A stretch of DNA of 64,000 bases from Macrostomum lignano (taxonomy: Eukaryota). Location: the NCBI GenBank assembly GCA_002269645.1, contig NIVC01000672.1, positions 124,001 to 188,000 on the forward strand, given 5' to 3'. Positions 16,211 to 54,242 of this stretch are shown here, piece after piece. The first letter of the stretch is position 1. Each line of letters starts with the position of its first letter. The notes under the pieces were generated by a model, which saw only the letters and a program-made list of their open reading frames with translations, was not told the origin of the DNA and did no database searches. Position numbers and translations under genes: made by a program.

Positions 16211-17373
16211 GCGCCCCAATCGGCTGTAAAACCGATGGGGCCCCTTTGCCAACAGTTTTGACGCCCTGATCCCAATTTCAGCAGTTCCCCAGCAACTATT
16301 GTACTTGGCACCCCAATGAAAAATCCAGACTCATGAGTTACTTGACGGCTGGCAAATTTTCTACACTAACAATGTCAGATGACAGTTTTTTATTTAGACG
16401 GTAAAACCCAGACCCAGAGGGCACATAAAATCGAATATTTCGAATTTGATGCGAACTGCATTCGGCCACTTCCTGTAATACATAATAAACACTCGTGAAG
16501 ACCTGCTGCTCCAACACTCTGTGCCCAGCTGTCCCTGCCCGTCAGCACAGCACCGCCGCTATCTCAGGCCTGCATCGATCTGGGCTGGGGTGGCGGGGGC
16601 TGCACCGGCTCTGTGACTCCGCCCTTCCGGAGCCACCGCCAGGGCGTTTGGAATCTCTCAGCACTGGCGCTGCCGGTTGTTAGAAGTAATAACTGGGGGG
16701 TTGTCAGGCTGACGCATCCGCTGCATTGGTGCTGCTTATCGGAGAGCTGCATCTGGGCCGCTGCCCCGCCACCCCCCTCCCCTGTCTAAACAGTCGCAGT
16801 TGCGAATACTCGGATTTATGCGCTGGAAGTCATCTCTCTCTCTCTCTCTCTGCGTGCTGCTCCACTCTGCGGCTCTCCCAGCTGAATTCGCACGCAACCG
16901 AAGGCGGCGCCGATCCTGTTGGAAACTTCGGGGCAAACCAAAGCCAGCCACGGTAAGCTCGGGGCCGCGCAAACTCTGCCTGATTTTTATTCCAATTCCG
17001 CGCCTCAGTTAGAAGAAGTTTCGAATAAAAGAGAAGTTTTCGAACTCGGCTGGAGCTGTGCGCAGTGAGCGAGATCTGCCGCATGCTGGGGTGTCCTCTG
17101 GCTGCCTCCGTTCCCACACAGCCACTGTAGCAGCCCGCGACTGAACAATAATAATATTTTCGCGCTCCAACTGTCTCCTTTAACCCCTCCAACCCGGCTC
17201 GAACTGATATCGAATAGCGCGCCACTGCTGTCTCCCCCCCCCCGACCCGCCAGCCTGGCTGTATCTCCACTCTGACTGGGGTGGCGGCCGAGCTTGAATA
17301 GAACTGAACCTGCAGCCGGCCCTCCATCCTCTCCTGTCGCAGACTTCACCAGCACCAGCCAGCAGCACCAGCG

Positions 17374-35700: not shown

Positions 35701-38700
35701 AAGCCTCAAACAGACTGAGAGAGCTGCTTCAGTTGTGTCTGTAGGTTATGTGGACCACCTAAGAGCCAGAGCCTCAAACAGACAGAGAAATCTGTTCGAG
35801 TTGTGTCTGTAGTTTAGGTGGACCAGCTATTCTACAGCACTTCTAGGCGATAATCTGAGCCAGGAATCTCCGAGAGCCTCTCGTTACACATCCAGATGTT
35901 CTGCCTTGATGCTGGACTAGCTCACTTTCTAGGAATCTGTTCTGATTGCATTCTAACAAACTGAAGCATTCTCGGCACTAAACTTTCTCGGCGGCTCTGA
36001 GAGCCAGAGCCTCAAACAGACAGAGAAATCTGTTCGAGTTGTGTCTGTAGGTTAGGTGGACCAGCTATTCTACAGCACTTCTAGGCGATAATCTGAGCCA
36101 GGAATCTCCGAGAGCCTCTCGTTACACATCCAGATGTTCTGCCTTGATGCTGGACTAGCTCACTTTCTAGGAATCTGTTCTGATTGCATTCTAACAAAAT
36201 GAAGCATTCTTGGCACTAAACTTTCTCGGCGGCTCTGAGAGCCAGAGCCTCAAACAGACAGAGAAATCTGTTCGAGTTGTGTCTGTAGGTTAGGTGGACC
36301 AGCTATTCTACAGCACTTCTAGGCGATAATCTGAGCCAGGAATCTCCGAGAGCCTCTCGTTACACATCCAGATGTTCTGCCTTGATGCTGGACTAGCTCA
36401 CTTTCTAGGAATCTGTTCTGATTGCATTCTAACAAACTGAAGCATTCTCGGCACTAAACTTTCTCGGCGGCTCTGAGAGCCAGAGCCTCAAACAGACAGA
36501 GAAATCTGTTCGAGTTGTGTCTGTAGGTTAGGTGGACCAGCTACTGAGAGCCAAAGCCTCAAACAGACTGAGAGAGCTGCTTCAGTTGTGTCTGTAGGTT
36601 ATGTGGACCACCTAAGAGCCAGAGCCTCAAACAGACAGAGAAATCTGTTCGAGTTGTGTCTGTAGGTTAGGTGGACCAGCTATTCTACAGCACTTCTAGG
36701 CGATAATCTGAGCCAGGAATCTCCGAGAGCCTCTCGTTACACATCCAGATGTTCTGCCTTGATGCTGGACTAGCTCACTTTCTAGGAATCTGTTCTGATT
36801 GCATTCTAACAAAATGAAGCATTCTTGGCACTAAACTTTCTCGGCGGTTCTGAGAGCCAGAGCCTCAAACAGACAGAGAAATCTGTTCGAGTTGTGTCTG
36901 TAGGTTAGGTGAACCAGCTACTCCACAGCACTTCTAGGCGATAATCTGAGCCAGGAATCTCCGAGAGCCTCTCGTTACACATCCAGATGTTCTGCCTTGA
37001 TGCTGGACTAGCTCACTTTCTAGGAATCTGTTCTGATTGCATACTAACAAACTGAAGCATTCTCGGCACTAAACTTTCTCGGCGGCTCTGAGAGCCAGAG
37101 CCTCAAACAGACAGAGAAATCTGTTCGAGTTGTGTCTGTAGGTTAGGTGGACCAGCTACTGAGAGCCAAAGCCTCAAACAGACTGAGAGAGCTGCTTCAG
37201 TTGTGTCTGTAGGTTATGTGGACCACCTAAGAGCCAGAGCCTCAAACAGACAGAGAAATCTGTTCGAGTTGTGTCTGTAGGTTAGGTGGACCAGCTATTC
37301 TACAGCACTTCTAGGCGATAATCTGAGCCAGGAATCTCCGAGAGCCTCTCGTTACACATCCAGATGTTCTGCCTTGATGCTGGACTAGCTCACTTTCTAG
37401 GAATCTGTTCTGATTGCATTCTAACAAACTGAAGCATTCTCGGCACTAAACTTTCTCGGCGGCTCTGAGAGCCAGAGCCTCAAACAGACAGAGAAATCTG
37501 TTCGAGTTGTGTCTGTAGGTTAGGTGGACCAGCTATTCTACAGCACTTCTAGGCGATAATCTGAGCCAGGAATCTCCGAGAGCCTCTCGTTACACATCCA
37601 GATGTTCTGCCTTGATGCTGGACTAGCTCACTTTCTAGGAATCTGTTCTGATTGCATTCTAACAAACTGAAGCATTCTCGGCACTAAACTTTCTCGGCGG
37701 CTCTGAGAGCCAGAGCCTTAAACAGACAGAGAAATCTGTTCGAGTTGTGTCTGTAGGTTAGGTGGACCAGCTACTGAGAGCCAAAGCCTCAAACAGACTG
37801 AGAGAGCTGCTTCAGTTGTGTCTGTAGGTTATGTGGACCACCTAAGAGCCAGAGCCTCAAACAGACAGAGAAATCTGTTCGAGTTGTGTCTGTAGGTTAG
37901 GTGGACCAGCTACTCCACAGCACTTCTAGGCGATAATCTGAGCCAGGAGTCTCCGAGAGACTTTCGTTACACATCCAGATGTTCTGCCTTGATGCTGGAC
38001 TAGCTCACTTTCTAGGAATCTGTTCTGATTGCATTCTAACAAACTGAAGCATTCTCGGCACTAAACTTTCTCGGCGGCTCTGAGAGCCAGAGCCTCAAAC
38101 AGACAGAGAAATCTGTTCGAGTTGTGTCTGTAGGTTAGGTGGACCAGCTATTCTACAGCACTTCTAGGCGATAATCTGAGCCAGGAATCTCCGAGAGCCT
38201 CTCGTTACACATCCAGATGTTCTGCCTTGATGCTGGACTAGCTCACTTTCTAGGAATCTGTTCTGATTGCATTCTAACAAACTGAAGCATTCTCGGCACT
38301 AAACTTTCTCGGCGGCTCTGAGAGCCAGAGCCTCAAACAGACAGAGAAATCTGTTCGAGTTGTGTCTGTAGGTTAGGTGGACCAGCTATTCTACAGCACT
38401 TCTAGGCGATAATCTGAGCCAGGAATCTCCGAGAGCCTCTCGTTACACATCCAGATGTTCTGCCTTGATGCTGGACTAGCTCACTTTCTAGGAATCTGTT
38501 CTGATTGCATTCTAACAAACTAAAGCATTCTCGGCACTAAACTTTCTCGGCGGCTCTGAGAGCCAGAGCCTCAAACAGACAGAGAAATCTGTTCGAGTTG
38601 TGTCTGTAGGTTAGGTGGACCAGCTACTGAGAGCCAAAGCCTCAAACAGACTGAGAGAGCTGCTTCAGTTGTGTCTGTAGGTTATGTGGACCACCTAAGA

Positions 38701-40973
38701 GCCAGAGCCTCAAACAGACAGAGAAATCTGTTCGAGTTGTGTCTGTAGGTTAGGTGGACCAGCTATTCTACAGCACTTCTAGGCGATAATCTGAGCCAGG
38801 AATCTCCGAGAGCCTCTCGTTACACATCCAGATGTTCTGCCTTGATGCTGGACTAGCTCACTTTCTAGGAATCTGTTCTGATTACATTCTAACAAACTGA
38901 AGCATTCTCGGCACTAAACTTTCTCGGCGGCTCTGAGAGCCAGAGCCTTAAACAGACAGAGAAATCTGTTCGAGTTGTGTCTGTAGGTTAGGTGGACCAG
39001 CTACTGAGAGCCAAAGCCTCAAACAGACTGAGAGAGCTGCTTCAGTTGTGTCTGTAGGTTATGTGGACCACCTAAGAGCCAGAGCCTCAAACAGACAGAG
39101 AAATCTGTTCGAGTTGTGTCTGTAGGTTAGGTGGACCACCTTCTGAGAGCCAAAGCCTCAAACAGACTGAGAGAGCTGATTCAGTTGTGTCTGTAGGTTA
39201 GGTGGACCAGCTTCTCTACAGCAATTGAGTTGCAGGCCTTGCAGCTAGCTACTTTGAGATCATCAAACGAAACTCACTTTTCTGGACTCGGTGTCGACGG
39301 ATCTGCGAGCAGACTGATGATTTTCACCAGGCGATGCGGCTTCTTCGATTTCGCAGTGGCTTTTTGCGACGGTGTTTTTTAGTTTTTATTTTAGGCTTGG
39401 CGTCCTTTTTTGCGGGTCATCATATCTTGGTTGTAGATTACAGTTTTTGGCACAATAAATTTATATATGGATGAAACTTGGAGTAAGGATTAACATTAGA
39501 CCTATTAAGTATAAAAAAACGTTCTAATCTATACAATTGCAATCCTTTAGAGTTGTATAGTGTGGATTATAAGTACTTTCTTTTAAACTGTCGGTGTCTG
39601 GTCTCACTACGCCATGGTTTACGTGGACCACCCGCTTAGACATTATATATCCCTCTCTCCACTGTCTTACCTTCAGAACGCTTGCGGGTTTCCTATTGGC
39701 TGCGGTCGGTCCCATTGTTGGGGTGGATCTATCCTCCTAAGTGTTAACCAGCCAATTATAGAAAGGGAGGTCTGTCTGTCTGTCTGTTCCAACCCTATAC
39801 TCCTGCACATGTGTTTACGTGGACCAAACAGACAGTGAGTGTTAGGCTGACTGTTAATGCGTTCTTAGTTTTACTGGGACCGCAATCAAGTCGACCTTTT
39901 GCTAGAGAGTCAGAGACCCGATCGCTAGCTAAAAGGCCCTTCTTAATTGCGTCCTCTTGATCAAATCTTTTGCATGTACATGTATGAATTGTCCTTTTCA
40001 ATTAGGTAAATTGCATCTTCAACTTTGCACTTGAAAGGCTGCAGCTTAGGATCTTCTTCTTCCAACATTGGAGGAGGATAGAACAGGATATCCCATAGTG
40101 TTAGGATAGAATTGGCAAGCACTTAATTCATGAAGTTGCTATTTTCTTCTTGTGTAATGGTAGAGCCTCAGAAATTCGCATTTACACAGTGTGGCTATCA
40201 AGGACCACTGGGAGTTCTTGAGAAGTCATTGAAGAATACTATTTAGGCTTCACTTAAATATCTTTCTTGTCTCGGAGTCTTTATCGTTTGATCTGGTTAG
40301 CGAATTGGATTTCTTTACGTTGGTGTCTTACTCTGTGAGTCTGTGCTCAGAGTACGATACCGGAATTGCTGGAACTGAGCTAATTAAATGGAGTTTAAAG
40401 TTTACTGTATCAAATTCATTTCGCATACGAGGTTTCAGAATTTTTAATTAACCTGCGCACCTACTTGAATGTCAAAGAACTGAACGCATATTGTTTTAAA
40501 GCCAGTAGCGGTCATAATATGATGCCAACATACCCCTTTGTTCGTAAGGTAATGATCTGTAAAAAATTCAGTTTTGCATTGAATCTATGCTTAATAACTG
40601 CTATACACAAACAGACACAAACAGACACAAACAGACACAAACAGACACAAACAGACACAAACAGACGATTTTCGAAAAATTTTCTAAAATTTTTCGGTTT
40701 ACGTGGACCAGACTCGCTCGGTTTAGGTAGACCAGGCTGGAGGTCCAGCTAAACTGAAATGCAAATAACTTTGGAAAAAACCATGCTAGACATCCCAAAA
40801 TTGCTTAAGCCTTTCTTGACCCGCCTGACATTAATGTGAGATTCTCATCAACGTCTTAACCCCACCAGAGACAAAATTATTTGGTGGTCCACCTAAGTGG
40901 TCTACCTACACCGGGTGGTCCAGCTAACGAGGCTACTGAACTTCCAAAAAGTCCACGTAAACACACAGACAGT
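32793..40973. mobile_element. Candidate non-autonomous TIR DNA transposon inserted in a (GACA)n tract and carrying an internal satellite
   Basis: 16-bp perfect inverted termini ACTGTCTGTGTGTTTA (32793-32808) / TAAACACACAGACAGT (40958-40973), extending imperfectly to GGAC. Motif TTA(C/G)GTGGACCA is forward near the left end and throughout the interior, and inverted three times at 40884-40927. No TSD or transposase recognised. Confidence 0.6.
33862..39215. repeat. Satellite array of 238-bp monomers interspersed with 139-bp units (both built on a ~70-bp GTGGACCA-containing subunit)
   Basis: CTGAGAGCCAGAGCC recurs at 34668, 34906, 35144, 35382 (period 238). 34291 to 34668 = 238+139. About 17 long monomers. 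Confidence 0.95.
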
Positions 40974-40977
40974 AGAA

Positions 40978-43456
<2,479 letters not shown>

Positions 43457-43717
43457 GAAATTTCCAATCCGGACAGTGTTGAGAGATTAGTAATAATTAG
43501 TAATAATGAGTAATAACTAGGCAGCATAAGCATTTCTAATTGATTAAAAATTGGAATTTAGATCTCTTTGCGAAGCTTGGCTACGAGCTACAAATGCAAA
43601 ATAACTTTACAAATTACACGAGTGCACTGCATGATTTTTACACATCGTAGTGAGGTTTGAGTCACCACGAGCTTGTTGCACGTGTCATCAGATAGAAAAC
43701 GCTATAGGCAGGATCAG

Positions 43718-44643
43718 ATAGAGAGGAGAGGAGAGAGAGGAGAGAGAGGAGAGGAGAGGAGAGGACAGAGAGGAGAGGAGAGAGAGGAGAGGAGAGGAGA
43801 GGAGAGGAGAGGAGAGAGAGGAGAGGAGAGGAGAGGAGAGAGAGGAGAGGAGAGAGAGGAGAGGAGAGAGAGGAGAGGAGAGGAGAGAGAGGAGAGGAGA
43901 GAGAGGAGAGGAGAGAGAGGAGAGAGAGGAGAGGAGAGGAGAGGAGAGGAGAGGAGAGGAGAGGAGAGAGAGGAGAGAGAGGAGAGAGAGGAGAGAGAGG
44001 AGAGGAGAGGAGAGGAGAGGAGAGAGAGGAGAGAGAGGAGAGAGAGGAGAGGAGAGGAGAGGAGAGGAGAGAGGAGAGGAGAGGAGAGGAGAGGAGAGAG
44101 AGGAGAGAGAGGAGAGGAGAGGAGAGGAGAGGAGAGGAGAGAGAGGAGAGAGAGGAGAGGAGAGAGAGGAGAGGAGAGAGAGGAGAGAGAGGAGAGAGAG
44201 AGGAGAGAGAGGAGAGGAGAGGAGAGGAGAGGAGAGGAGAGAGAGAGAGGAGAGAGAGGAGAGGAGAGGAGAGGAGAGAGAGGAGAGGAGAGGAGAGAGA
44301 GGAGAGAGGAGAGGAGAGGAGAGGAGAGAGAGAGGAGAGAGAGGAGAGAGAGGAGAGAGAGAGGAGAGGAGAGGAGGGAGGAGAGGAGAGAGAGAGAGGA
44401 GAGGAGAGGAGGGAGGAGAGGAGAGAGAGGAGAGGAGAGGAGAGAGAGGAGAGGAGAGGAGAGAGAGAGGAGAGGAGAGGAGAGAGAGGAGAGGAGAGGA
44501 GAGGAGAGGAGAGGAGAGGAGAGAGAGAGGAGAGGAGAGGAGAGAGAGGAGAGGAGAGGAGAGGAGAGGAGAGGAGAGGAGAGGAGAGGAGAGGAGAGGA
44601 GAGGAGAGGAGAGGAGAGGAGAGGAGAGGAGAGGAGAGAGGAG
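43718..44643. repeat. Polypurine (AGAGG/AG)n tract, ~0.9 kb
   Basis: Direct reading. Confidence 0.97.
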
Positions 44644-44654
44644 CTTAAATAAGC

Positions 44655-45486
44655 TGTGATGATGGGGCCCAAGGGCTCGGTCCTTTCGTGCCCCTTTCCC
44701 AGACCCGGGTTCGTGTACTGACCCTGGCTGCGGTCCTCCACTGACACGCGTACGACGCGGTGTCCGTCGGGACTAGGCTGCTCGAGCGTACGACGCACGA
44801 CAGCCTACAGACTCGCGTACGACGCAGAGCTGCTTGGGGTGGGACCGGCGTACGACGCACTTAATCCCTCTAAGGTGCCTAGTACAGATGCAGACCCAAA
44901 TGACGTACAAATTGGAAGGCTTACCAGCCGCGATTTCAGTCGTACAAGAAACAGCGCCGTCAGAGCAGTGGTGATCTCGATATTCTTTACTTATATATTT
45001 GTCTAGCAATTCTGCGAGGAATAGCAATTCAGCAACCAACGCTGGCACAATCGCCGAGGAGCCACGAAGACGACGAGAATGGGGTCTCAAGGGGGCCGAA
45101 TAAATAGGCAGCAAACTGGGGGTCGAGGGCGCGGGATAAAGGCAGAAAAGGGGGCTTAGACATCAGCCAAGGCAACGCATGAGCTGTACCAGCCAATCGC
45201 CGGGCGCAGCACGGCAGACTGGGACTGGCAGCCAATCACAAACAGGGGCGGGGCAGCAAAGCTAACAAAATAATGGGGCGGGGTCGCACAGGGGGGGGGG
45301 TCGCACGCAGAGCATGGGGGGTTTGACTCAACAGAAAAGGTCTAGGCAGGGAGGGGAGGGGTACGCACGCGCAGAAGTGCAGGTGGGTGAGTCAGAAAAT
45401 ATCTAAGGAGGGGGGAGAGGACGGCCGACTGGCCCGGCGTAGCAAAGTAGCAAAGTACACACAGTCATAATAACACATTCATGACA
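44655..45486 (-). repeat. 3' LTR (832 bp)
   Basis: Matches 52494-53328 except for two G-run length differences. Confidence 0.97.
44991..45285 (-). promoter_or_regulatory. LTR U3 promoter elements (also present in the 5' LTR): GC boxes, CCAAT boxes, TATA box
   Basis: Two GGGGCGGGG (~45245, ~45275), two AGCCAATC (~45191, ~45230) and TATATAA on the minus strand at 44991-44997, in promoter-like order. Confidence 0.55.
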
Positions 45487-45498
45487 CTCCCGTCCCCT
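45487..45498 (-). promoter_or_regulatory. Polypurine tract (AGGGGACGGGAG)
   Basis: Directly abuts the TGT start of the 3' LTR. Confidence 0.85.
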
Positions 45499-46058
45499 AG
45501 ACAAAAGTTCGAGTTCGAAAAGTCGAATATTGAAATGATGCTACTATAACAAAAAAATTGAACAGAGGAACAAACCGCATTTGAAAAATATTTTGGACTC
45601 GCATGGCAACTAGTTCGAACAAAAAACAAAACCGCAGTGATTATACCGTTTAAAAATGACGAAGAAACCTTCAAACATAGGATAGTGAGTACGCATCATT
45701 GGGAAGCAAAACGCAAATTTTGGGAAAAACTCACTTTAACAAAAACGCTGAAGTTCGAAAAAAACGCTAAATGTTCACAAAAAACAAAAAAATGAAACCG
45801 TCAAACATTTACCCTCACAAGTAATACTAGCACTGCTTCCCTGCATCCCGCCGAGTACGGCCGTCGCTCTGGTGCCTCGTCTCCCTGTCGCTACTGTCGC
45901 CGGTTGCTCTGGTCGCTCTGCGCTGGTCGTCGAGTCCTGCGGTTGCTGCACAGCCGTCGCTCCGTCAGCACCCGTTAAGGCCGGTCCACCTCCGCTCCGC
46001 TGTCCCTGGGTCTGCACTGCAAAGTCCCTAGCCCCAAAGTCCCTAGGAAGACATAGCC

Positions 46059-47045
46059 TCAGTCAGAGCACGAATCCCACAGCCTACGGAGGGCACCCAG
46101 GACCAAACCCTGGCGTCGCAGGTCGAACAGTGGGAACACCACCATCACCGACATGTAGACAGCTTGACACGCTTGGCGACTCCACCGACGAACTCCGTGC
46201 CCCGGATACTTGCGACCGTCTCGCTCCAAGTAGCCCAGGATTTGCAGCATCAACTCCGGACCGAATTCCTTGAAATCCACCAAGGCAGTGGCGCACTTCC
46301 CCTTCAGGGCTAGCAGCACCTCAAAGATGCCCCACGGGTCGCCCTTCCGCATTGCCTGGTGCAGTTTCTTCCGACTGGGTCCTACGTTCTCCAGTTCCGC
46401 GACGGTCACTGGTCGGCACGGTCTTGTCTGAAGCCGGTACGCTCTCTGCAGATATTCTTCAATCAGGTTTCTACATCCGGCACAATCTTCCTCCGCTTCC
46501 CATGACGTCTCAAGCTCCTCTACACCGGCCCACTGCAGCAGATACTCCGCTCCTCGCTCCGTGACTCGTACTCCTAAGACCTTCTCGACCTCGTACTCCT
46601 CCGGCAGTGTCTCACTCGCCTCGTTCATCTCTTCGTCCTGCTCATCGTCTGAGGCCTCCTCACTTGCCTCCATCTTGACGTGCTCCTCATCCCTCCTCGC
46701 CTGTTCTCTCTCGTACGCCTCCTCAGCTAATCGGTCGCTCTCTTGTAGTCTTTCTATCTCTTCTCGGAGATCGTCGGGCATGTCTTCATCCTCTAACATC
46801 CCTTCTGCGAGCCGAAGCATCTCATCCCGGTCACGAACAGCATTTCCAAAGATATCGTACAGCTTTCTAAGGAACGGACACGACAGTATTCGGTACGCCT
46901 CTTCGCACTCCTGGAATCTCTTCCGCGTCTCCTCTGTTGCGCTCTTGTCAGGGTGCAGTTCGCGTGCTCGACCGTAGAACGCTTTCCGAATCTGTGCCGC
47001 AGACGCCCACAGCTGCACTCCAAGACACTCGTAGAGGTCCGCCAT
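46059..47045 (-). CDS. Accessory ORF3: DnaJ (J) domain + acidic linker + chromodomain + helical C-terminal domain (328 aa)
   Basis: aa 2-67 DLYECLGV..ASAAQIRKAF..RELHPDK..RFQECEEAYRILSCPFLRKLYD is a canonical J-domain. aa 151-200 YEVEKVLGVR..AEYLLQWAG..TSWEAEED..NLIEEY is a chromodomain. Intact ORF between pol and the PPT, on the same strand as gag-pol. Confidence 0.92.
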   Translation of the reverse strand: MADLYECLGVQLWASAAQIRKAFYGRARELHPDKSATEETRKRFQECEEAYRILSCPFLRKLYDIFGNAVRDRDEMLRLAEGMLEDEDMPDDLREEIERLQESDRLAEEAYEREQARRDEEHVKMEASEEASDDEQDEEMNEASETLPEEYEVEKVLGVRVTERGAEYLLQWAGVEELETSWEAEEDCAGCRNLIEEYLQRAYRLQTRPCRPVTVAELENVGPSRKKLHQAMRKGDPWGIFEVLLALKGKCATALVDFKEFGPELMLQILGYLERDGRKYPGHGVRRWSRQACQAVYMSVMVVFPLFDLRRQGLVLGALRRLWDSCSD

Positions 47046-47227
47046 CTGTAACAGTCCGGCCTAACTCCGATGAGCAATGAGACACGCACGACATGTACCT
47101 CCCTTCCCCCTTGGCTATCCCAGCGCCGTACACCGGACCCTTCTTCAGTAGTGGTACACCGGGACCCCAAACCGATCTGGCGGTCGCCGCAGACGTTTTG
47201 GTCGCCCTGCTTCCTCCTGTGCCGTCC

Positions 47228-50200
47228 TCACTTCCTGCTCGGGTACGTTGGCGTCGTTCGGCTCTGCCTCATCCTCTTCGTCCTGCTCCTCGTCGTACCG
47301 CGACTCATCGTCGTGCTCTTCTTCGTCATCGTCTGCTTCTCGACGCTCAGGTCCGGGCTCACAGTCTTCGGCCAGATTTCGGGTGTCCGGTGGAGCGTGA
47401 TCTCTTGGATCTTGAAACCGCAGCTGAAGATCTTCAAACTCTTCATCTTCCTGCTCGGATTCCTGGTCCTGCGGCCCTCGCGCTGCGGTCCACCTCTGGG
47501 TCTCGCCCCGTTGCACTCTCTGCCTTCGGCTTCGTCCAGCAGCGGAATTATCACGTCGCGGCCTGGTTTTTCCCGAACTGGCCCTCCCAATTTCCTCTCT
47601 GTCTCTTGACCGTCTGCCGCCTCCGTCTGAACCTGAACCGGCCGGAGATTGTTGAAGTGCACCACCTTGGTCTTCTGCGGCTGTGTCGGATCCTGCACTC
47701 GGTACAACGCATCTGACAGCTTCTCCAGGACCTTCACTGGGCCGCGCCAGTTGATATGGAACTTGCTTTTCTCTCCCATCTCCAAGCACGGATAGTACAG
47801 CAAGACAGAGTCGCCCTTCTGAATCGCTTTGCCCTTCACTTTCCGATCGTAATTCATTTTCTGCCGTCGCTGAACCGTCTCGCGTCCTTCTCGAATGCGT
47901 TCATGGGCATGAAGCAGGTTCTGCTTGATCTCTTGCACAAACAAGGGACAGCTGTCCGTCTTTCGCCTAAGGTCCTCTGGTTCGAATCCCAGTGGCATCT
48001 CCTGACCATGCAGCATGTAGTAGGGCGTGTAACCGGTGGACGCCTGGACCGTCGATCGATAAGCCATCAATGCACTTGGCAGGTACTCCTCCCAGGCGTT
48101 CTGACCCTTCTGTACCAGATACGTGCGCAAACTGTTCTTCAGGAACCCATTAAATCGTTCCACCTGTCCGTTGCCACTCGGGTGGTAGGCGCTCGTCCTG
48201 GTCTTCTTCACACCCAACAGCTCGCACAGCTTCCTGACGATCCCCGACTCAAAGTTCCTTCCTTGGTCTGAGTGAAGTACCCGGGGGCACCCGTGATTGG
48301 CAATCCAGCGTTCGAATAGCACCCTTGCGATCGTTGCCGCCTTCTGGTTCCGGATGGCATAAGCGTCAGGCCACTTTGAGAACGCATCTTGCACCGTGAG
48401 GATGTAGAAGTTTCCTTTCTTGCTCCGTGGCAGCGGCCCGATGACGTCCGTCATCACGATATCGAATGGGCTTGAACTCGGAATCGGCTCCATCGGTGCA
48501 ATTGGTTTCTTGCCAGCTTTGGCCTTGGTGCAGTCCAAACAGGCTTTTACGTGCTCTTCGACCTCGCGGCCAAGTCCCGGCCTCCAAAACGATTGCCGCA
48601 CCTTCTCCTTGGTCTTGAAAATCCCAACGTGCCCTCCACTCCGTCCACCATGAGCTTCTTCCAGCACCGCTCTCAGCATATTCCGTGGCAACACCACTTG
48701 CGGCTGACGTCTACTGGCCGTATGACACAGCAACACCTCACTGTCCGACACCTCAAGGTCACGACGTCTTTCGACAATCCTCCTTGCCGTCGGTGATATG
48801 CGCCGCAAATGCTCTTCGGTTATCTCTCCGTCGCTGTGAGCCAGCAGCTCCATCGCCTGACGAATGTCGCTGTCCATCTTCTGGCTCTCTCTGATCTCCT
48901 CCGAGGTCCACTTCTGCAATCCCAACGCGTTCACGCCGATCTGCTCTTGTGCACATCCAGGACAACTCTCGCTTCCTTGATGGCGCCGACGTGGCTTCCT
49001 GGAGAGAGCGTCCGCGTGTTGATGTTTCACTCCCGGACGATGTTCGATGCGATACCTGTACGGAGCCAAGAGTTCCAGCCATCTGGCCAGTTGTCCTTCT
49101 ACGTCCCGCAGCGAATGCAGCCACTTCAAGCTGCTGTGATCGGTGCGCACTAGAAACTCTCGCCCCATCAGGTAATAACGAAACTTCTGTACGAAAAACA
49201 CCACGGCCAGCAACTCGACTCGTGTCGTGCAGTAATTCCGTTCTTCTCGCGACAACGTCCTGCTTCCGTAAGCTATTACCTTCTCACTCCCATCTTTCTG
49301 CACCTGCGAAAGCACAGCGCCAATTCCTTCTTTTGTGCTACCGTCTGTGTCTAAAACGAATTCTCCAGCGTCCTCCGCAAAGTTTGGAAACGCCATGACC
49401 TCAGATCCCTGCAACCTTTCCTTCAGGGCCTCGAATGCGGCTTGACACTCCTCATCCCAGCTCCACGGGCAATCATGTCGGGTCCGTCGCAGCATCGGCT
49501 CAGCAATGCGGGAAAAATCTGCGATGAATTGCCGGTAATACCCGCACAGTCCCAGGAATGACCTTACTTCCTTCACATTCCTCGGAGTTGGCCAGTCACG
49601 AATTTCGGCAATCTTTTCTGGACTCGTGGCGATCCCATCAGCTGACACTACGTGTCCCAGGAAGGTCACTGACTTCAGCAGGAATGCGCACTTCTTCGGC
49701 TTCAGTTTGATGTTCGCTGCTCGCAACCGTCGAAAAACCGTTTGCAACCGTTCCAGGTGCTCTTCTACCGTTCGTGACCACACTAGCAGGTCGTCCAGAT
49801 ACACCAAACACGTCTTCCAGCACAACTTCCCCAACACCACATTCATTAGCCGGCTGAATGAAGCCGGTGCATTTGTCAATCCAAATGGCATAACGTTCCA
49901 GGCGTACTGCTGTACCCGGTGTGAAACGCCAAAGGCCGTCTTCAGTCTGTCGCTGGGTTCCACCGCCATCTGCCAGTATCCCGACTGCATGTCCATGGTC
50001 GAAAAAATCTTGGCACCGCCTAGGCTCTCCAACAGGTCATCTGTCCTGGGCAACGGCACTGCATCCTTCTTGGTCACTTCATTCAGTTTCCGGTAGTCAC
50101 AACAGAACCTCAGGGAACCGTCCTTCTTTTTCACGCACACCACCGGAGAGCACCATGGGGACTGAACCTCGCTGATTCTCCCAGCTTCCAGCAAGTCATC

Positions 50201-50299
50201 CAACTCCTTGTCCACTTCCTGCCGCAGGTAAGGGGGAATCCGCCTCGCCGCCTCTTTCACAGGCCTGGCATCTCCAGTGTCGATCTCGTGCTTCATCAC
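47228..50299 (-). CDS. pol: Pol: reverse transcriptase, RNase H, integrase
   Basis: SLRFCCDYRKLN, DMQSGYWQ, MPFGLTNAPASF, YLDD (RT); LDTDG, ELLAV (RNase H); H..H..CxxC, DVIGP, HSDQGRNFES, GQVER (integrase); RGPVKV..VHFNNL (GPY/F-like). The true C-terminus is probably in the 47145 frame. Confidence 0.97.
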   Translation of the reverse strand: MMKHEIDTGDARPVKEAARRIPPYLRQEVDKELDDLLEAGRISEVQSPWCSPVVCVKKKDGSLRFCCDYRKLNEVTKKDAVPLPRTDDLLESLGGAKIFSTMDMQSGYWQMAVEPSDRLKTAFGVSHRVQQYAWNVMPFGLTNAPASFSRLMNVVLGKLCWKTCLVYLDDLLVWSRTVEEHLERLQTVFRRLRAANIKLKPKKCAFLLKSVTFLGHVVSADGIATSPEKIAEIRDWPTPRNVKEVRSFLGLCGYYRQFIADFSRIAEPMLRRTRHDCPWSWDEECQAAFEALKERLQGSEVMAFPNFAEDAGEFVLDTDGSTKEGIGAVLSQVQKDGSEKVIAYGSRTLSREERNYCTTRVELLAVVFFVQKFRYYLMGREFLVRTDHSSLKWLHSLRDVEGQLARWLELLAPYRYRIEHRPGVKHQHADALSRKPRRRHQGSESCPGCAQEQIGVNALGLQKWTSEEIRESQKMDSDIRQAMELLAHSDGEITEEHLRRISPTARRIVERRRDLEVSDSEVLLCHTASRRQPQVVLPRNMLRAVLEEAHGGRSGGHVGIFKTKEKVRQSFWRPGLGREVEEHVKACLDCTKAKAGKKPIAPMEPIPSSSPFDIVMTDVIGPLPRSKKGNFYILTVQDAFSKWPDAYAIRNQKAATIARVLFERWIANHGCPRVLHSDQGRNFESGIVRKLCELLGVKKTRTSAYHPSGNGQVERFNGFLKNSLRTYLVQKGQNAWEEYLPSALMAYRSTVQASTGYTPYYMLHGQEMPLGFEPEDLRRKTDSCPLFVQEIKQNLLHAHERIREGRETVQRRQKMNYDRKVKGKAIQKGDSVLLYYPCLEMGEKSKFHINWRGPVKVLEKLSDALYRVQDPTQPQKTKVVHFNNLRPVQVQTEAADGQETERKLGGPVREKPGRDVIIPLLDEAEGRECNGARPRGGPQREGRRTRNPSRKMKSLKIFSCGFKIQEITLHRTPEIWPKTVSPDLSVEKQTMTKKSTTMSRGTTRSRTKRMRQSRTTPTYPSRK

Positions 50300-51351
50300 C
50301 GTCGTACGCCGAGATCCTTGGAGTCCTTAGCAAAGACAGCCCGATGTTGGGAAATCAGCTCCCTGAAGTCGGCTTCCTCCTCCTCCGACAGGCCACACGA
50401 ACCCCACTCGCGGAATTCTTCGATCGGGTCCCATGCCTCCGCTTCATTCTTGGCCTCTACGTCGTCGTCCAAGCGCACCACGTTGATACCTCCGTTCGGT
50501 TCCAAAGGAATAAACCAGCCAATCGTCTCTCCTTTCTTGACCCTCTTCCTACAACTGGACGTATTCAGCAATCTCATCGGCAGCCGTCCATCCACGCCGG
50601 GCGCTACCAGAGCTCGAGCCAGCGCCAAATCCTTCTCAGCGGCCTTCACCGGCTTTTCTTCCGTTATGCCGACCGATCCGCAGTTTCTTGCGCCCTTTTT
50701 CTCTACCCTGGCTGGCATGATCACTTCTTGCGCCGGTTCCAGAAATACCGTTGTCTCGGCTTTGATTCGACACACCACGGGCAGCTCGCCTTTCTGCCGT
50801 ATCGGAACTCTAACATCGCCCACTCGAAAGACAAACTCTGAATAGTTGATGACGCAACGATGCTGTTTGAAAAATTCGGACCCGAGAATGACATCATAAC
50901 GTAATCCGTCCACTACGAAGAAATTCGCTGACCACCGCTCGCCGCCAATCTCCACGTCCAGCACAATGCAGCCTCTCATCCTCATCGCACCTCCATTGGC
51001 CGTTGAAAGGGAACCGTCCATTGCAGTCAGTCTCTCCCTCACCTCTTGCGGCAGCCTCAGGAAAACATCACAGCTCAGCACTGACACACTCGCACCACTG
51101 TCTAACAGCAGAGCCACTGGCTTGCCGGAAACCGCACCGGAAATAAAAACTGTCAGAGGCTCCGTTGATACCGACGAACACGCCTCATGAACCAGGTTGC
51201 TCTTTGAATTCCCATCACCAGAGACGCACTTGGATTTATTTACAGAGTTAGTGAGCAACCCCGGTTCCTCGCTCCTGGGAGACTTCACTTCCTGGCAGGG
51301 TCCCGACTCTCCCCGGTCGGTCCCCTCGGCCCGTTTCCCGACTTCGGACAC
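50296..51351 (-). CDS. pol: Pol, N-terminal part: aspartic protease (in the -1 frame relative to gag)
   Basis: LLLDSGASVSVL active-site motif; YDVILGSEFF; ends FAKDSKDLG, which normally runs straight into RT. Confidence 0.92.
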   Translation of the reverse strand: MSEVGKRAEGTDRGESGPCQEVKSPRSEEPGLLTNSVNKSKCVSGDGNSKSNLVHEACSSVSTEPLTVFISGAVSGKPVALLLDSGASVSVLSCDVFLRLPQEVRERLTAMDGSLSTANGGAMRMRGCIVLDVEIGGERWSANFFVVDGLRYDVILGSEFFKQHRCVINYSEFVFRVGDVRVPIRQKGELPVVCRIKAETTVFLEPAQEVIMPARVEKKGARNCGSVGITEEKPVKAAEKDLALARALVAPGVDGRLPMRLLNTSSCRKRVKKGETIGWFIPLEPNGGINVVRLDDDVEAKNEAEAWDPIEEFREWGSCGLSEEEEADFRELISQHRAVFAKDSKDLGVRR

Positions 51352-52385
51352 TTGAAGGATAGGTGGCCTTCACCGTTGCACTTGTGACATCGTACTGGCG
51401 ATTTCCCGTTTTCACTCTTCTGACTGGTCTTCTTCGGACACTTTGATGAGATATGGCCCCACTCTCGACACGAAAAACACTGCACAGCCTTCCGACTCGC
51501 CGGGGTCGGCTCTGCCGCTTCTTCAGACCTCCGCTCCTCCATCTCTTTCATTCGCATCTCCATGGCCGCCAGCTGTTTTCGAAGCATCTCGACCTCACTG
51601 CTTTCGGAAGCCTCCTTTCTGGTCTCGGTCGTAACAGCACAAACGGTTCTTTTCGATACCTGACCTGGTGGACCATGACTTGCCCTAACCGCCGCTTCCA
51701 GCTGATGCACCAGACGCATTGCGTCCGCTAACGTCTCCGGCTGGCTCATGTACAGTCGCTCCCGCACAGCCACCCCCGCACGGACGCCTCGCATAAATCG
51801 CTCTTTCGCAAGATCATCGCGCACATCGGCAGGCGCATCAGGAAAGGCGTTTGCGACCAACTCAATCACAGCTTCAGAGAAATCTTCTACCGACTCCTTC
51901 TCACTCTGCTCTCTATTGCTCAGTTCTGTGCGGTAGTCGACGACGGTACGGTGCATAGTGAACCTATCCCTCAAGGCCTGGGTAAATTCTTCGAACTGCA
52001 AGTCGTCCCCAAGGTTCATGTTGTCAACAACTTGGAAGGTGCTGAAGTCTAGGTTGCTGAGCAACTGAGCGCGCCGATTCTGCATCGGAATCTGCATGGC
52101 ATCGCAATAAGCTACGAAGAGCCTCAACCACTTCACGAAATTCATTCCTGGAGCATACTTCACCGGCCTCTGAATCCTGAGGGCACCCGCTTGCTGCATG
52201 TTCTGCTGAATCTGGGCAGTCAAGGCGGCGACCAGATCATTAACACCAAAGGCTCCAGCAGCACCTCCAGCAGCACCTCCAGCCGCACCTCCAGCCGCAC
52301 CTCCAGCCGCACCTCCAGCCGCACCTCCAGCCGCACCTCCAGCCGCACCTCCAGCAGCACCTCCAGCAGCACCTCCAGCATCCAT
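51285..52385 (-). CDS. gag: Gag with N-terminal (GGAA)10 repeat and two CCHC zinc knuckles
   Basis: CFSCREWGHISSKC and CHKCNGEGHLSFKC; QSEKESVEDFS capsid-like motif; ATG ~90 nt after the PBS. Confidence 0.93.
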   Translation of the reverse strand: MDAGGAAGGAAGGAAGGAAGGAAGGAAGGAAGGAAGGAAGGAAGAFGVNDLVAALTAQIQQNMQQAGALRIQRPVKYAPGMNFVKWLRLFVAYCDAMQIPMQNRRAQLLSNLDFSTFQVVDNMNLGDDLQFEEFTQALRDRFTMHRTVVDYRTELSNREQSEKESVEDFSEAVIELVANAFPDAPADVRDDLAKERFMRGVRAGVAVRERLYMSQPETLADAMRLVHQLEAAVRASHGPPGQVSKRTVCAVTTETRKEASESSEVEMLRKQLAAMEMRMKEMEERRSEEAAEPTPASRKAVQCFSCREWGHISSKCPKKTSQKSENGKSPVRCHKCNGEGHLSFKCPKSGNGPRGPTGESRDPARK

Positions 52386-52472
52386 ACCACGGCGTCACAG
52401 TTTCTAACCTTAATTTCTCACAATATTCCGCGCCTCGAGCTTTCTTCCTTGCTTAGTCTTCCACAGCGCAGG

Positions 52473-52490
52473 GTCCCACCAAGGATGCCA
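52473..52490 (-). promoter_or_regulatory. Primer binding site (TGGCATCCTTGGTGGGAC), possibly tRNA-Arg
   Basis: Starts with TGG 3 nt inside the 5' LTR. Its complement GTCCCACCAAGGATG-CCA resembles a tRNA 3' end; the Arg assignment is inference. Confidence 0.85.
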
Positions 52491-52493
52491 ATT

Positions 52494-53328
52494 TGTGATG
52501 ATGGGGCCCAAGGGCTCGGTCCTTTCGTGCCCCTTTCCCAGACCCGGGTTCGTGTACTGACCCTGGCTGCGGTCCTCCACTGACACGCGTACGACGCGGT
52601 GTCCGTCGGGACTAGGCTGCTCGAGCGTACGACGCACGACAGCCTACAGACTCGCGTACGACGCAGAGCTGCTTGGGGTGGGACCGGCGTACGACGCACT
52701 TAATCCCTCTAAGGTGCCTAGTACAGATGCAGACCCAAATGACGTACAAATTGGAAGGCTTACCAGCCGCGATTTCAGTCGTACAAGAAACAGCGCCGTC
52801 AGAGCAGTGGTGATCTCGATATTCTTTACTTATATATTTGTCTAGCAATTCTGCGAGGAATAGCAATTCAGCAACCAACGCTGGCACAATCGCCGAGGAG
52901 CCACGAAGACGACGAGAATGGGGTCTCAAGGGGGCCGAATAAATAGGCAGCAAACTGGGGGTCGAGGGCGCGGGATAAAGGCAGAAAAGGGGGCTTAGAC
53001 ATCAGCCAAGGCAACGCATGAGCTGTACCAGCCAATCGCCGGGGCGCAGCACGGCAGACTGGGACTGGCAGCCAATCACAAACAGGGGCGGGGCAGCAAA
53101 GCTAACAAAATAATGGGGCGGGGTCGCACAGGGGGGGGGGTCGCACGCAGAGCATGGGGGGGGTTTGACTCAACAGAAAAGGTCTAGGCAGGGAGGGGAG
53201 GGGTACGCACGCGCAGAAGTGCAGGTGGGTGAGTCAGAAAATATCTAAGGAGGGGGGAGAGGACGGCCGACTGGCCCGGCGTAGCAAAGTAGCAAAGTAC
53301 ACACAGTCATAATAACACATTCATGACA
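52494..53328 (-). repeat. 5' LTR (835 bp)
   Basis: Followed on the minus strand by the PBS and gag. Confidence 0.97.
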
Positions 53329-53664
53329 AAGCAGACAGCAAGATGGGTCGATAAGCGAGGCTGAGACACGCGAATCTGAATGGCAAACCGCAGAGCAGGG
53401 CTGGATTCAGATGAAATTAGCTGGACCGATAAATGAGTCATTGTGTTGTCTCGCTCCGCCCGACTTCCCCTATCCTGTTGTCTGCCGCGGCATCAAAGCA
53501 CAGAGCGTACTTTCTAATTCTCACTCTTTTAACAGCCGGTGCCTGGGTGCTTGAACTGGGGCTCAGCAGTCGCAAAAACCGGCTGCCAAACAAAAGGCTT
53601 TAAAGGGCGTTTCCTGCCTCAGCCTGTCGTGTCTGGCTTGTCAGCTGCTTTCTGGCGGCAGGTG

Positions 53665-54242
53665 CCAGTGAACAGCGGGGGGCTGGCACAGAAATCAGCG
53701 GACACTGAGGCGGCAGCGTGCCAGTGAACAGCGGGGGGCTGGCACAGAAATCAGCGGACACTGAGGCGGCAGTGAACAGCGGGGGGCTGGCACAGAAATC
53801 AGCGGACACTGAGGCGGCAGGTGCCAGTGAACAGCGGGGGGCTGGCACAGAAATCAGCGGACACTGAGGCGGCAGTGAATAGCGGGGGGCTGGCACAGAA
53901 ATCAGCGGACACTGAGGCGGCAGGTGCCAGTGAACAGCGGGGGGCTGGCACAGAAATCAGCGGACACTGAGGCGGCAGTGAATAGCGGGGGGCTGGCACA
54001 GAAATCAGCGGACACTGAGGCGGCATGTGCCAGTGAACAGCGGGGGGCTGGCACAGAAATCAGCGGACACTGAGGCGGCATGTGCCAGTGAACAGCGGGG
54101 GGCTGGCACAGAAATCAGCGGACACTGAGGCGGCAGGTGCCAGTGAACAGCGGGGGGCTGGCACAGAAATCAGCGGACACTGAGGCGGCAGTGAATAGCG
54201 GGGGGCTGGCACAGAAATCAGCGGACACTGAGGCGCCAGTGA
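53665..54242. repeat. 48/55-bp minisatellite (GTGAACAGCGGGGGGCTGGCACAGAAATCAGCGGACACTGAGGCGGCA)
   Basis: Direct reading, ~11 copies. Confidence 0.95.

What the first reader, a model, noticed from the sequence alone, without database searches (positions are those of the whole stretch)
46059..47045. Gypsy retrotransposon encoding a J-domain–chromodomain fusion protein in the env position
Seen: an intact 328-aa ORF inside the LTRs, after pol and before the PPT. It has a textbook J-domain with the HPD motif (aa 31-33), a very acidic ~80-aa linker, a chromodomain (aa 151-200) and an unassigned helical C-terminus. Established: J-domains stimulate Hsp70 through HPD; polyomavirus T antigen uses one to dismantle Rb-E2F; host DNAJC9 couples a J-domain to histone H3-H4 handling; chromoviruses carry a chromodomain fused to integrase, not as a separate ORF. 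I know of no LTR retrotransposon with a stand-alone J+chromo protein. Inference: an element-encoded factor that binds methylated chromatin and recruits Hsp70, either to disassemble silencing complexes (anti-silencing), to open heterochromatin for integration, or to chaperone particle assembly/uncoating.
Basis: partly seen in the sequence, partly recalled or inferred. Interest (0 to 1): 0.95.

Follow-up and report, generated by a model that had tools for sequence, protein, structure and literature searches.

The report
Flatworm retrotransposon carrying J-domain–chromodomain gene
A young Ty3/Gypsy retrotransposon of the flatworm Macrostomum lignano carries, where retroviruses carry env, a conserved extra gene for a protein with an Hsp70-recruiting J-domain, an HP1-like chromodomain and a helical domain with no detectable relatives; I found no earlier description of this combination in a mobile element.

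Summary
Window 47045..46059 (minus strand) is an intact 328-aa ORF. It has a full-length J-domain with HPD, a 42% acidic linker, an HP1/Swi6-type chromodomain, and a C-terminal helical bundle with no sequence or fold relatives.

The ORF lies between pol and the polypurine tract of an 8,674-bp Ty3/Gypsy element (44655-53328). The LTRs are 99.6% identical and the target-site duplication is 4 bp. The host is Macrostomum lignano.

The ORF is part of the element. At least four separate insertions carry it. A 76%-identical homologue in another sample gives dN/dS 0.18 (dS 0.82), and every domain is constrained. A second, diverged M. lignano family also has a J-domain ORF after integrase. No host J+chromo gene close to it was found.

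Two caveats:
- The chromodomain has two of the three usual cage aromatics; the third is Val or Leu.
- The window copy's pol needs two more reading frames than its sibling copies.

A perfect M. lignano trans-splice acceptor motif ends one base before the ATG. This suggests the ORF has its own spliced mRNA.

The function is inferred: a chromatin-directed class-C J-protein that serves the element. It is a new variant of a known kind (captured ORF3). Papers were searched and nothing matched; Repbase and Dfam could not be checked.

The parts
44655..53328 (-). Whole Ty3/Gypsy LTR retrotransposon (8,674 bp)
   Evidence: Direct repeats and blastn of the two ends. TG..CA termini were read. The pol best matches Ty3 Gag-Pol, PDB 7q5b, E 4e-121.
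52494..53328 (-). 5' LTR (835 bp)
   Evidence: 99.64% identical to the 3' LTR: 0 mismatches and 2 gaps. No canonical heat-shock element.
44655..45486 (-). 3' LTR (832 bp)
53329..53332 (-). Target-site duplication GCTT, upstream copy
   Evidence: Read.
44651..44654 (-). Target-site duplication GCTT, downstream copy. It borders a (GAGAG)n microsatellite.
   Evidence: Read. Microsatellite.
52473..52490 (-). Putative primer-binding site. It starts with TGG three bases after the 5' LTR.
   Evidence: Read. No tRNA gene in the window to match it against, so it stays putative.
51285..52385 (-). gag ORF (366 aa) with two CCHC zinc knuckles. The N-terminus carries a 12-nt tandem repeat.
47145..51351 (-). 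pol: protease, RT, RNase H, integrase (zinc-binding, core and p58-C domains) and a charged tail. No chromodomain. In this copy it is spread over more reading frames than in sibling copies (two frame changes).
   Evidence: Pfam, PDB, comparison with L002 and L003.
47046..47051 (-). TTACAG. It matches the M. lignano trans-splice acceptor motif [T/C]TNCAG and ends one base before the ORF3 ATG.
   Evidence: Motif taken from PMC8629364. Position and counts: 15 motifs in the element's sense strand, and this is the only one followed by ATG.
46059..47045 (-). ORF3, 328 aa plus stop: the J-domain-chromodomain protein
46854..47039 (-). J-domain (aa 3-64). HPD is at aa 31-33, window 46947-46955.
   Evidence: Pfam 59.1 bits. 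Ydj1 J-domain: E 1.2e-10 by sequence; rmsd 1.4 A over 66 columns by fold.
46602..46838 (-). Acidic linker (aa 70-148), partly predicted as a long helix
   Evidence: 42% Asp+Glu. Model.
46443..46595 (-). HP1/Swi6-type chromodomain (aa 151-201). Cage positions are Y151, W172 and V175.
   Evidence: Pfam 47.7 bits. Swi6, CBX5, CBX1, HP1 and Rhino hits. Column counts.
46062..46436 (-). C-terminal helical domain (aa 204-328) with no known relatives
45499..46058 (-). 560-bp T-rich non-coding spacer between ORF3 and the polypurine tract. No AATAAA or ATTAAA.
45487..45498 (-). Polypurine tract (12 nt, 11 purines) abutting the 3' LTR
   Evidence: Read.

Best explanation
ORF3 is a true accessory gene of a recently active Ty3/Gypsy family of Macrostomum lignano.

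What the protein is. By architecture it is a class-C (type III) J-protein:
- an N-terminal J-domain with HPD, able to switch on the ATPase of host Hsp70/Hsc70;
- an acidic linker;
- an HP1-like chromodomain;
- a private helical bundle.

How it is probably made. It probably comes from its own processed mRNA. A trans-splice (or cis-splice) acceptor sits exactly at its ATG, so the long element transcript would be cut there, much as retroviral env mRNA is made.

What it most likely does. As in other class-C J-proteins, the non-J parts choose the place or client and the J-domain brings Hsp70 to it. Here the place is chromatin (a histone tail or a chromatin-bound complex), and the helical bundle is the likeliest handle for the element's own proteins. 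My preferred concrete role is at the integration step. The protein would be a tether supplied in trans, doing what the integrase-fused chromodomain does in chromoviruses. Hsp70 would then remodel or dismantle the incoming particle or integration complex on chromatin.

Shown:
- the anatomy;
- that the ORF belongs to the element;
- independent insertions;
- purifying selection;
- the intact HPD;
- the incomplete aromatic cage;
- the acceptor motif.

Inferred:
- splicing;
- Hsp70 recruitment;
- chromatin binding;
- the integration role.

My probabilities:
- functional accessory gene, about 0.85;
- chromatin-directed Hsp70 recruiter, about 0.5;
- integration-step role, about 0.3.
For: - Domains and their order.
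- No G/F, zinc-finger or DnaJ C-terminal domain, hence class C.
- The element's integrase has no chromodomain of its own.
- Same ORF in the same position in L002 (full copy, own TSD CTTA, unrelated flanks), in L003 (unrelated flanks), and in the locus behind the chimeric model P0005.
- ORF3 is intact in L002 although gag, protease and pol there are split over several frames.
- dN/dS against the 76%-identical homologue is 0.18 at dS 0.82: J 0.13, linker 0.31, chromo 0.13, C-terminal 0.16.
- A second M. lignano family (P0009) has integrase only 40-43% identical and is also followed by a J-domain ORF. Among 160 compared J segments, the Phe-Leu pair at positions 58-59 occurs in no other protein than P0002 and P0009.
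- The acceptor motif ends one base before the ATG. Its per-position frequency in the element is 0.0017, and it is identical in three copies.
- GenBank gene models for this ORF come from a transcriptome-based annotation that cuts units at trans-splice and poly(A) signals.
- ORF3s of LTR elements are typically expressed from spliced messages (PMC5408684).
Against: - The third aromatic-cage position is Val (Leu in the homologue). It is aromatic in 247 of 286 compared chromodomain segments, so methyl-lysine reading may be weak or changed.
- The chromodomain was poorly modelled.
- Nothing links the helical bundle to integrase or Gag.
- The four known insertion sites show no common chromatin type: a microsatellite edge, an intron of a MutS-family gene, and others.
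- The J-domain is the part seen in both families, and it is unknown whether the second family has a chromodomain. The core function may therefore need no chromatin.
- No expression data were read here.
- The homologue in L001 has TTTTAG rather than the exact acceptor motif.
Confidence: 0.5

Rival explanations
1. Counter-silencing factor. The chromodomain takes the protein to H3K9-methylated chromatin laid down on element copies. There it competes with HP1, and Hsp70 dismantles the silencing complexes through the J-domain. This would resemble the way polyomavirus T antigen uses its J-domain on Rb-E2F complexes.
For: - The chromodomain's nearest solved relatives are HP1-class readers (Swi6, CBX5, CBX1, HP1, Rhino), and the preceding acidic patch aligns as well.
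- No chromoshadow domain, so it could occupy sites without building heterochromatin.
- HPD is intact.
- The logic of 'J-domain plus target-binding module' is established for class-C J-proteins and T antigen (my own knowledge).
Against: - The aromatic cage is incomplete in both homologues, which weakens the case for competing with HP1.
- No sequence specificity for its own family is visible.
- I know of no precedent in animal elements.
- No chromatin or expression data.
Confidence: 0.2
2. Private co-chaperone for the element's own proteins. The J-domain recruits Hsp70 to fold reverse transcriptase or to assemble or uncoat Gag particles. The chromodomain and helical bundle serve as protein- or RNA-binding modules rather than histone readers.
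For: - The J-domain is the part shared with the second, diverged family.
- The chromodomain cage is incomplete.
- Many viruses depend on Hsp70/Hsp40 for polymerase activation and capsid handling (my own knowledge).
Against: - The chromodomain is as constrained as the J-domain (dN/dS 0.13 each) and keeps the HP1-like signature apart from one cage position.
- A plain co-chaperone would not need it.
Confidence: 0.15
3. Passenger gene. A host J+chromo gene, or two host fragments, was recently picked up and is carried without use to the element.
For: - Capture of host ORFs by LTR elements is common (PMC5408684).
- A J+chromo protein with no RT/pol match on its contig and ordinary cellular genes beside it exists elsewhere (P0103).
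Against: - dN/dS is 0.18 over dS 0.82, and all parts are constrained.
- ORF3 is intact in L002 while gag and pol have decayed.
- A related J ORF occurs in a family whose integrase is only 40-43% identical.
- No close host gene among 1.84 billion representative proteins. Only two hits fall below 1e-30: the homologue, and a protein made of six J-domains.
Confidence: 0.05

Closest known systems
Chromoviruses (Ty3/Gypsy elements with a chromodomain fused to the integrase C-terminus)
   Same: A Ty3/Gypsy element that carries a chromodomain. In chromoviruses this domain steers integration towards marked chromatin (established knowledge). Some chromoviral chromodomains also lack cage aromatics (my own knowledge).
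   Different: Here the integrase has no chromodomain. The chromodomain sits in a separate downstream ORF, is HP1-like with an acidic patch, and is joined to a J-domain and a novel helical domain.
Non-env ORF3s captured by LTR retrotransposons (GDSL esterase and DEDDy exonuclease in bdelloid rotifers, PMC5408684; an RNA demethylase domain in orchid elements, PMC9289625)
   Same: An extra ORF of host-like origin in or near the env position, family-specific, usually expressed from a spliced message.
   Different: None of those is a J-domain or chromodomain protein. I found no paper describing this pair in a retroelement.
J-domain of polyomavirus T antigens
   Same: A J-domain with HPD, encoded by a mobile or viral genome and joined to a target-binding part. 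It directs host Hsc70 at a chosen complex (my own knowledge; no such sequence was fetched or compared).
   Different: A DNA virus, with no chromodomain. No named hit of that kind came back from my searches; the nearest J-domains are cellular type A/B ones (Ydj1, DNAJA2, DNAJB).
Chromatin-directed cellular J-proteins (DNAJC2/ZRF1, DNAJC9; Arabidopsis J-proteins working with the remodeller PICKLE, bioRxiv 10.64898/2026.09.14.751395)
   Same: Class-C logic: a J-domain plus a module that recognises chromatin or histones (my own knowledge for DNAJC2 and DNAJC9; the abstract for the plant proteins).
   Different: Different chromatin-binding modules (SANT, histone-binding helices). These are host genes, not element-borne. 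No sequence relation beyond the J-domain.
HP1 / Swi6 / CBX chromodomain proteins
   Same: Best solved matches for residues 127-204, including the acidic stretch before the domain. Two of the three cage aromatics are present.
   Different: No chromoshadow domain. The third cage residue is Val or Leu. The N-terminus is a J-domain.
P0103, an unnamed 263-aa J-domain + chromodomain protein from an environmental eukaryote contig (ENA ERZ25067524)
   Same: Same domain order, with a charged linker.
   Different: Only 27% identical. It has the usual Tyr at the third cage position and no C-terminal helical domain. Its neighbours are ordinary cellular genes, and no reverse transcriptase lies nearby.

Membership tests
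Ty3/Gypsy (Metaviridae) LTR retrotransposon | Two LTRs in direct orientation with TG..CA ends and a short target-site duplication | tested here: met
   LTRs of 835 and 832 bp, 99.6% identical. TSD is GCTT.
Ty3/Gypsy (Metaviridae) LTR retrotransposon | pol domain order protease - RT - RNase H - integrase, and similarity to Ty3 pol | tested here: met
   Pfam order. Ty3 Gag-Pol 7q5b, E 4e-121 over residues 15-887.
Ty3/Gypsy (Metaviridae) LTR retrotransposon | gag with a nucleocapsid zinc knuckle; PBS after the 5' LTR; polypurine tract before the 3' LTR | tested here: met
   CCHC knuckles. Purine tract. The PBS is only putative: it starts with TGG but no tRNA was matched.
Named animal clade of Ty3/Gypsy (Mag, CsRN1, Gmr1/Osvaldo, Mdg3) | Position in an RT phylogeny with reference elements | not testable with these tools
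   No reference set of named elements was at hand. PMC12801592 places M. lignano families in these clades, but its tables were not available.
Chromovirus | Chromodomain at the C-terminus of integrase | tested here: not met
   No Chromo hit in the 1,023-aa pol ORF. The chromodomain is in ORF3.
J-domain protein (Hsp40 family) | J-domain above Pfam's threshold with the His-Pro-Asp loop | tested here: met
   59.1 bits against a cut-off of 27.8. HPD at 31-33; these columns are H in 153, P in 156 and D in 151 of 160 compared segments.
J-domain protein (Hsp40 family) | Four-helix J fold | tested here: met
   The model matches the Ydj1 J-domain: rmsd 1.4 A, target TM-score 0.79. Model pLDDT for this part is about 70-79.
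J-domain protein (Hsp40 family) | Stimulates Hsp70 ATPase | not testable with these tools
   Needs biochemistry.
Class A/B DnaJ | Gly/Phe-rich region, zinc-finger domain, DnaJ C-terminal domain | tested here: not met
   No such Pfam hits. By architecture the protein is class C.
HP1 family | Chromodomain with a three-residue aromatic cage | tested here: not met
   The chromodomain is present. Cage positions are Y151, W172 and V175; the third is aromatic in 247 of 286 compared segments. Which columns form the cage is my own knowledge.
HP1 family | C-terminal chromoshadow domain | tested here: not met
   No Chromo_shadow hit. The C-terminus is a helical bundle.
Retroviral / errantiviral env | Envelope glycoprotein families or a membrane-protein make-up | tested here: not met
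   Pfam gives only DnaJ, Chromo and one sub-threshold hit (Fer2_BFD, 18.8 bits against a cut-off of 26). The protein is acidic and soluble-looking, pI 4.8. No transmembrane predictor was run.
F-box protein | F-box motif or fold in the C-terminal domain | tested here: not met
   By eye, part of the C-terminus recalled an F-box. There was no Pfam hit even at E<=10 and no F-box among PDB fold matches. BFVD gave only non-significant Pandoravirus F-box rows, E about 2.

The most novel reading that the evidence does not exclude
The element encodes its own anti-silencing machine. An HP1-like reader finds repressive chromatin on element copies, and through its J-domain it uses the host's Hsp70 as the motor to strip silencing complexes. 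It would be made from a trans-spliced mRNA cut out of the element's own transcript. This would be the first retroelement-encoded J-protein and the first animal transposon-encoded chromatin counter-defence.
Probability: 0.15. Interest if true: 0.92.

Novelty: new variant of a known kind. Interest (0 to 1): 0.7.

Why it matters
Known precedents: LTR retrotransposons capture extra genes, chromodomains steer some of them, and some DNA viruses carry J-domains. Here one conserved element gene joins a chaperone-recruiting domain to a chromatin-reader domain.

If the protein does bring Hsp70 to chromatin, it would show a new way for a mobile element to deal with host chromatin, either for choosing insertion sites or for resisting silencing. 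It would also give a compact natural example of 'targeted Hsp70'.

The host is a laboratory model with a genome, transcriptomes, trans-splicing maps and a catalogue of 137 LTR families. Expression and distribution can therefore be checked with existing data. The same worm has LTR families that respond to heat shock (PMC12801592). This makes an element-borne Hsp70 partner worth a look, although this family's LTR has no canonical heat-shock element.

Tried and rejected
- F-box in the C-terminal domain: rejected. No Pfam hit at E<=10, and no significant fold match in PDB or BFVD.
- Sequence relatives of the C-terminal domain: only the protein itself and the 76% homologue.
- More members of the second J-ORF family: a search with the J part of P0009 gave only ordinary DnaJ proteins in the allowed length range. 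P0009 has no recorded contig.
- Heat-shock elements in the LTR: none in the whole window.
- Read-through fusion of pol and ORF3: unlikely. In L002 the pol tail and ORF3 share a frame, but in-frame stops lie in the short spacer (read).
- P0006 and P0039 (45% identical J-domains): proteins of several tandem J-domains on an 809-kb contig with no reverse transcriptase nearby. Not the same architecture.
- Identity of sample SRR24204725 (source of the homologue): not found in papers.
- Exact look-up of the window's gag, protease and pol proteins, for copy number: not in the collection.
- Full-length structure model: only the J-domain and the C-terminal bundle were usable. The chromodomain came out below pLDDT 50 because the alignment had four rows.
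- Left out on purpose: a scan of the viral contig collection with this J-domain protein. It could have fetched J-domain-bearing viruses of animals.
- Not available: Repbase, Dfam and GyDB. 'Not described before' therefore rests on the paper searches alone.

Full report
**What is there.** The stated interval holds an ATG-initiated ORF of 328 codons on the minus strand, 47045..46059. It lies inside a complete LTR retrotransposon, 44655-53328, also on the minus strand.
- The LTRs are 835 and 832 bp. They differ by two gaps and no mismatches, and they begin TG and end CA.
- A 4-bp duplication, GCTT, flanks the element.
- In sense order the element has gag with two CCHC knuckles, then protease, RT, RNase H and integrase, then a charged tail.
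- ORF3 follows 100-180 nt later. After it come a 560-bp T-rich spacer and a 12-nt purine tract that touches the 3' LTR.
- The pol best matches yeast Ty3 Gag-Pol (7q5b, E 4e-121), so the element is Ty3/Gypsy.
- Cluster members name the host as Macrostomum lignano, assembly GCA_002269645.1.

**The protein.**
- Pfam finds a full-length J-domain (residues 3-64, 59.1 bits) and a chromodomain (151-201, 47.7 bits). Nothing else passes threshold.
- The J-domain carries HPD at 31-33. It aligns end to end with Ydj1 and DnaJ J-domains, and the model superposes on Ydj1 at 1.4 A.
- There is no G/F region, zinc finger or DnaJ C-terminal domain. By architecture the protein is a class-C J-protein.
- Residues 70-148 are 42% Asp+Glu.
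- The chromodomain's nearest solved relatives are Swi6, CBX5, CBX1, HP1, Rhino and Chp1, and the match extends into the acidic stretch before the domain.
- I compared 286 chromodomain segments from 82 proteins returned by the representative search. The column of W172 is Trp in all of them. The column of Y151 is aromatic in 253. The column of V175 is aromatic in 247 and never Val. The homologue has Leu at that position. To my knowledge these three columns form the methyl-lysine cage, so the cage is two-thirds complete.
- Residues 204-328 have no Pfam hit even at E<=10 and no sequence relatives beyond the homologue.
- They fold in prediction as a six-helix bundle (pLDDT 74, pTM 0.68). That bundle matches nothing significant in PDB or BFVD.

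**It belongs to the element and is kept by selection.**
- L002 (NIVC01000412) holds a full copy, 98.5% identical. It has its own LTR pair (99.9% identical), its own TSD (CTTA) and unrelated flanks.
- L003 (NIVC01001165) holds a third copy with another flank and a nested foreign insertion.
- The chimeric gene model P0005 shows a fourth copy inside a MutS-family gene. That gene's exons are not in the window.
- ORF3 is intact in the window, in L002 (one residue different) and, as far as the model reads, in P0005. In L003 it is broken by one premature stop and at least one internal deletion.
- In L002 gag falls into 2 frames, protease into 2, and pol into 3 frames in 5 pieces, yet ORF3 is whole.
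- The only other close relative among 5.8 billion clustered and 1.84 billion representative proteins is P0002. It is 76% identical and comes from sequencing run SRR24204725.
- Against it, dN/dS is 0.18 at dS 0.82. By part: J-domain 0.13, linker 0.31, chromodomain 0.13, C-terminal part 0.16.
- That contig ends in another element's zinc-knuckle ORF on the opposite strand. The shorter C-terminus of P0002 is therefore probably a truncation.
- The sample's species could not be identified. At 80% nucleotide identity a congener is likely, which is an inference.

**A second family.** P0009 is an M. lignano gene model from an older assembly. It strings together a J-domain, integrase pieces and a second J-domain preceded by the integrase C-terminus.
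- Its integrase parts are 40-43% identical to the window's, and its J-domains 40-51%.
- Among 160 J-domain segments, the Phe-Leu pair at positions 58-59 occurs in no other protein than P0002 and P0009.
- So a J-domain ORF after integrase is older than this family. Whether the second family has a chromodomain is unknown.

**How it may be expressed.** PMC8629364 reports that M. lignano trans-splice acceptors carry [T/C]TNCAG right at the junction, and that the 35-nt leader ends in ATG.
- On the element's sense strand this motif occurs 15 times in 8,674 nt. One occurrence ends exactly one base before the ORF3 ATG, and it is the only one followed by ATG.
- The same twelve bases stand there in L002 and L003. 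The homologue has a pyrimidine-rich TTTTAG|ATG.
- The GenBank models for this ORF come from an annotation built on transcripts and cut at trans-splice and poly(A) signals.
- I read no RNA data, so splicing is inferred.

**What it is not.**
- Not env: no envelope family, and an acidic soluble make-up.
- Not a chromovirus in the defining sense: the integrase has no chromodomain.
- Not an F-box protein.
- Not a recent copy of a host J+chromo gene. The only other J+chromo protein seen, P0103, is 27% identical, has the usual Tyr at the third cage position, and sits among ordinary genes on a small environmental eukaryote contig with no pol match.

**Mechanism.**
- The best-supported reading is a chromatin-directed class-C J-protein working for the element. 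The J-domain brings Hsp70. The chromodomain, and perhaps the helical bundle, choose where.
- I prefer a role at integration, because steering integration is the only role chromodomains are known to have in Ty3/Gypsy elements.
- Counter-silencing and private chaperoning of the element's proteins are live rivals. A useless passenger is largely excluded by the selection data.
- The incomplete cage is the main caveat for any methyl-lysine model.

**Novelty.** Extra ORF3s of host-like origin are known (PMC5408684, PMC9289625), as are integrase-fused chromodomains and viral J-domains.
- I found no paper describing a J-domain, or a J-domain plus chromodomain, in a retroelement.
- The M. lignano LTR surveys do not mention it.
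- Repbase, Dfam and GyDB could not be consulted.
- I class it as a new variant of a known kind.

**State of the window copy.** Its LTRs are nearly identical, and gag, the pol domains and ORF3 are all open. Sibling copies, however, read protease with RT in one frame, and L002 reads integrase with its tail in one frame. The window needs two more frames: two frame changes in pol, and none in gag or ORF3. The assembly is PacBio-based, and the only LTR differences are two one-run gaps. These frame changes may therefore be assembly errors, and I cannot tell.

- In working out the frame changes I reasoned about roughly where they lie, and the output brackets one of them. I do not repeat those places here.
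- I did not scan the viral contig collection with this protein, because its J-domain could have fetched viruses of animals.

Noticed in passing
window 141-1022 and 2738-4426 (+): Two neighbouring ORFs with TRAF-type zinc fingers. The second also has a MATH domain. This looks like a tandem pair of TRAF-like host genes.
   Followed up: partly
window 40961-41790, 42393-42854, 43716-44643, 55876-57880: Very long microsatellites: (ACAGACAG)n, (ACAG)n, (GAGAG)n and about 2 kb of (CAGT)n. The element's 3' LTR ends 11 bp from the (GAGAG)n array.
   Followed up: partly
window 53654-54239 and 38000-39215: Tandem arrays of 55/103-nt units just upstream of the element, and of 71/238/377-nt units further away. 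Nature unknown.
   Followed up: no
window 52253-52379 (-): A 12-nt tandem repeat (10.6 copies) forms the N-terminus of gag as a run of Gly-Gly-Ala-Ala. A length difference in this repeat might account for the window gag being only 82% covered in L002; this was not checked.
   Followed up: no
window 17005-19596, both strands: Several long overlapping ORFs (312-491 aa) on both strands in a 62-64% GC stretch, with no Pfam hit. Probably compositional rather than coding.
   Followed up: partly
L003:4460-8320 (-): A 1,286-aa ORF on the opposite strand interrupts that copy of the element: a nested insertion of another, unidentified element.
   Followed up: no
L001:794-1042 (-): The contig with the 76% homologue ends in a reverse-strand ORF with two zinc-knuckle motifs. 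This is probably the gag of another element that cuts off the homologue's C-terminus.
   Followed up: partly
L004:794-1585: P0103, a 263-aa J-domain + chromodomain protein with the usual Tyr at the third cage position. It lies on a 38% GC environmental eukaryote contig beside NUP50-like, complex I 49-kDa and another DnaJ gene. This looks like an independent cellular version of the same domain pair.
   Followed up: partly
L005:10001-12040 and 16473-17966: Two proteins made of several tandem J-domains (six in P0006, two in P0039) a few kb apart on an 809-kb contig of unknown origin. No reverse transcriptase nearby.
   Followed up: no
window 47046-47144 (-): In L002 the integrase tail and ORF3 share a reading frame, and the window's alternative tail frame does too. 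The 99-nt spacer between them contains in-frame stops, so a read-through fusion of integrase to the chromodomain protein looks unlikely.
   Followed up: partly
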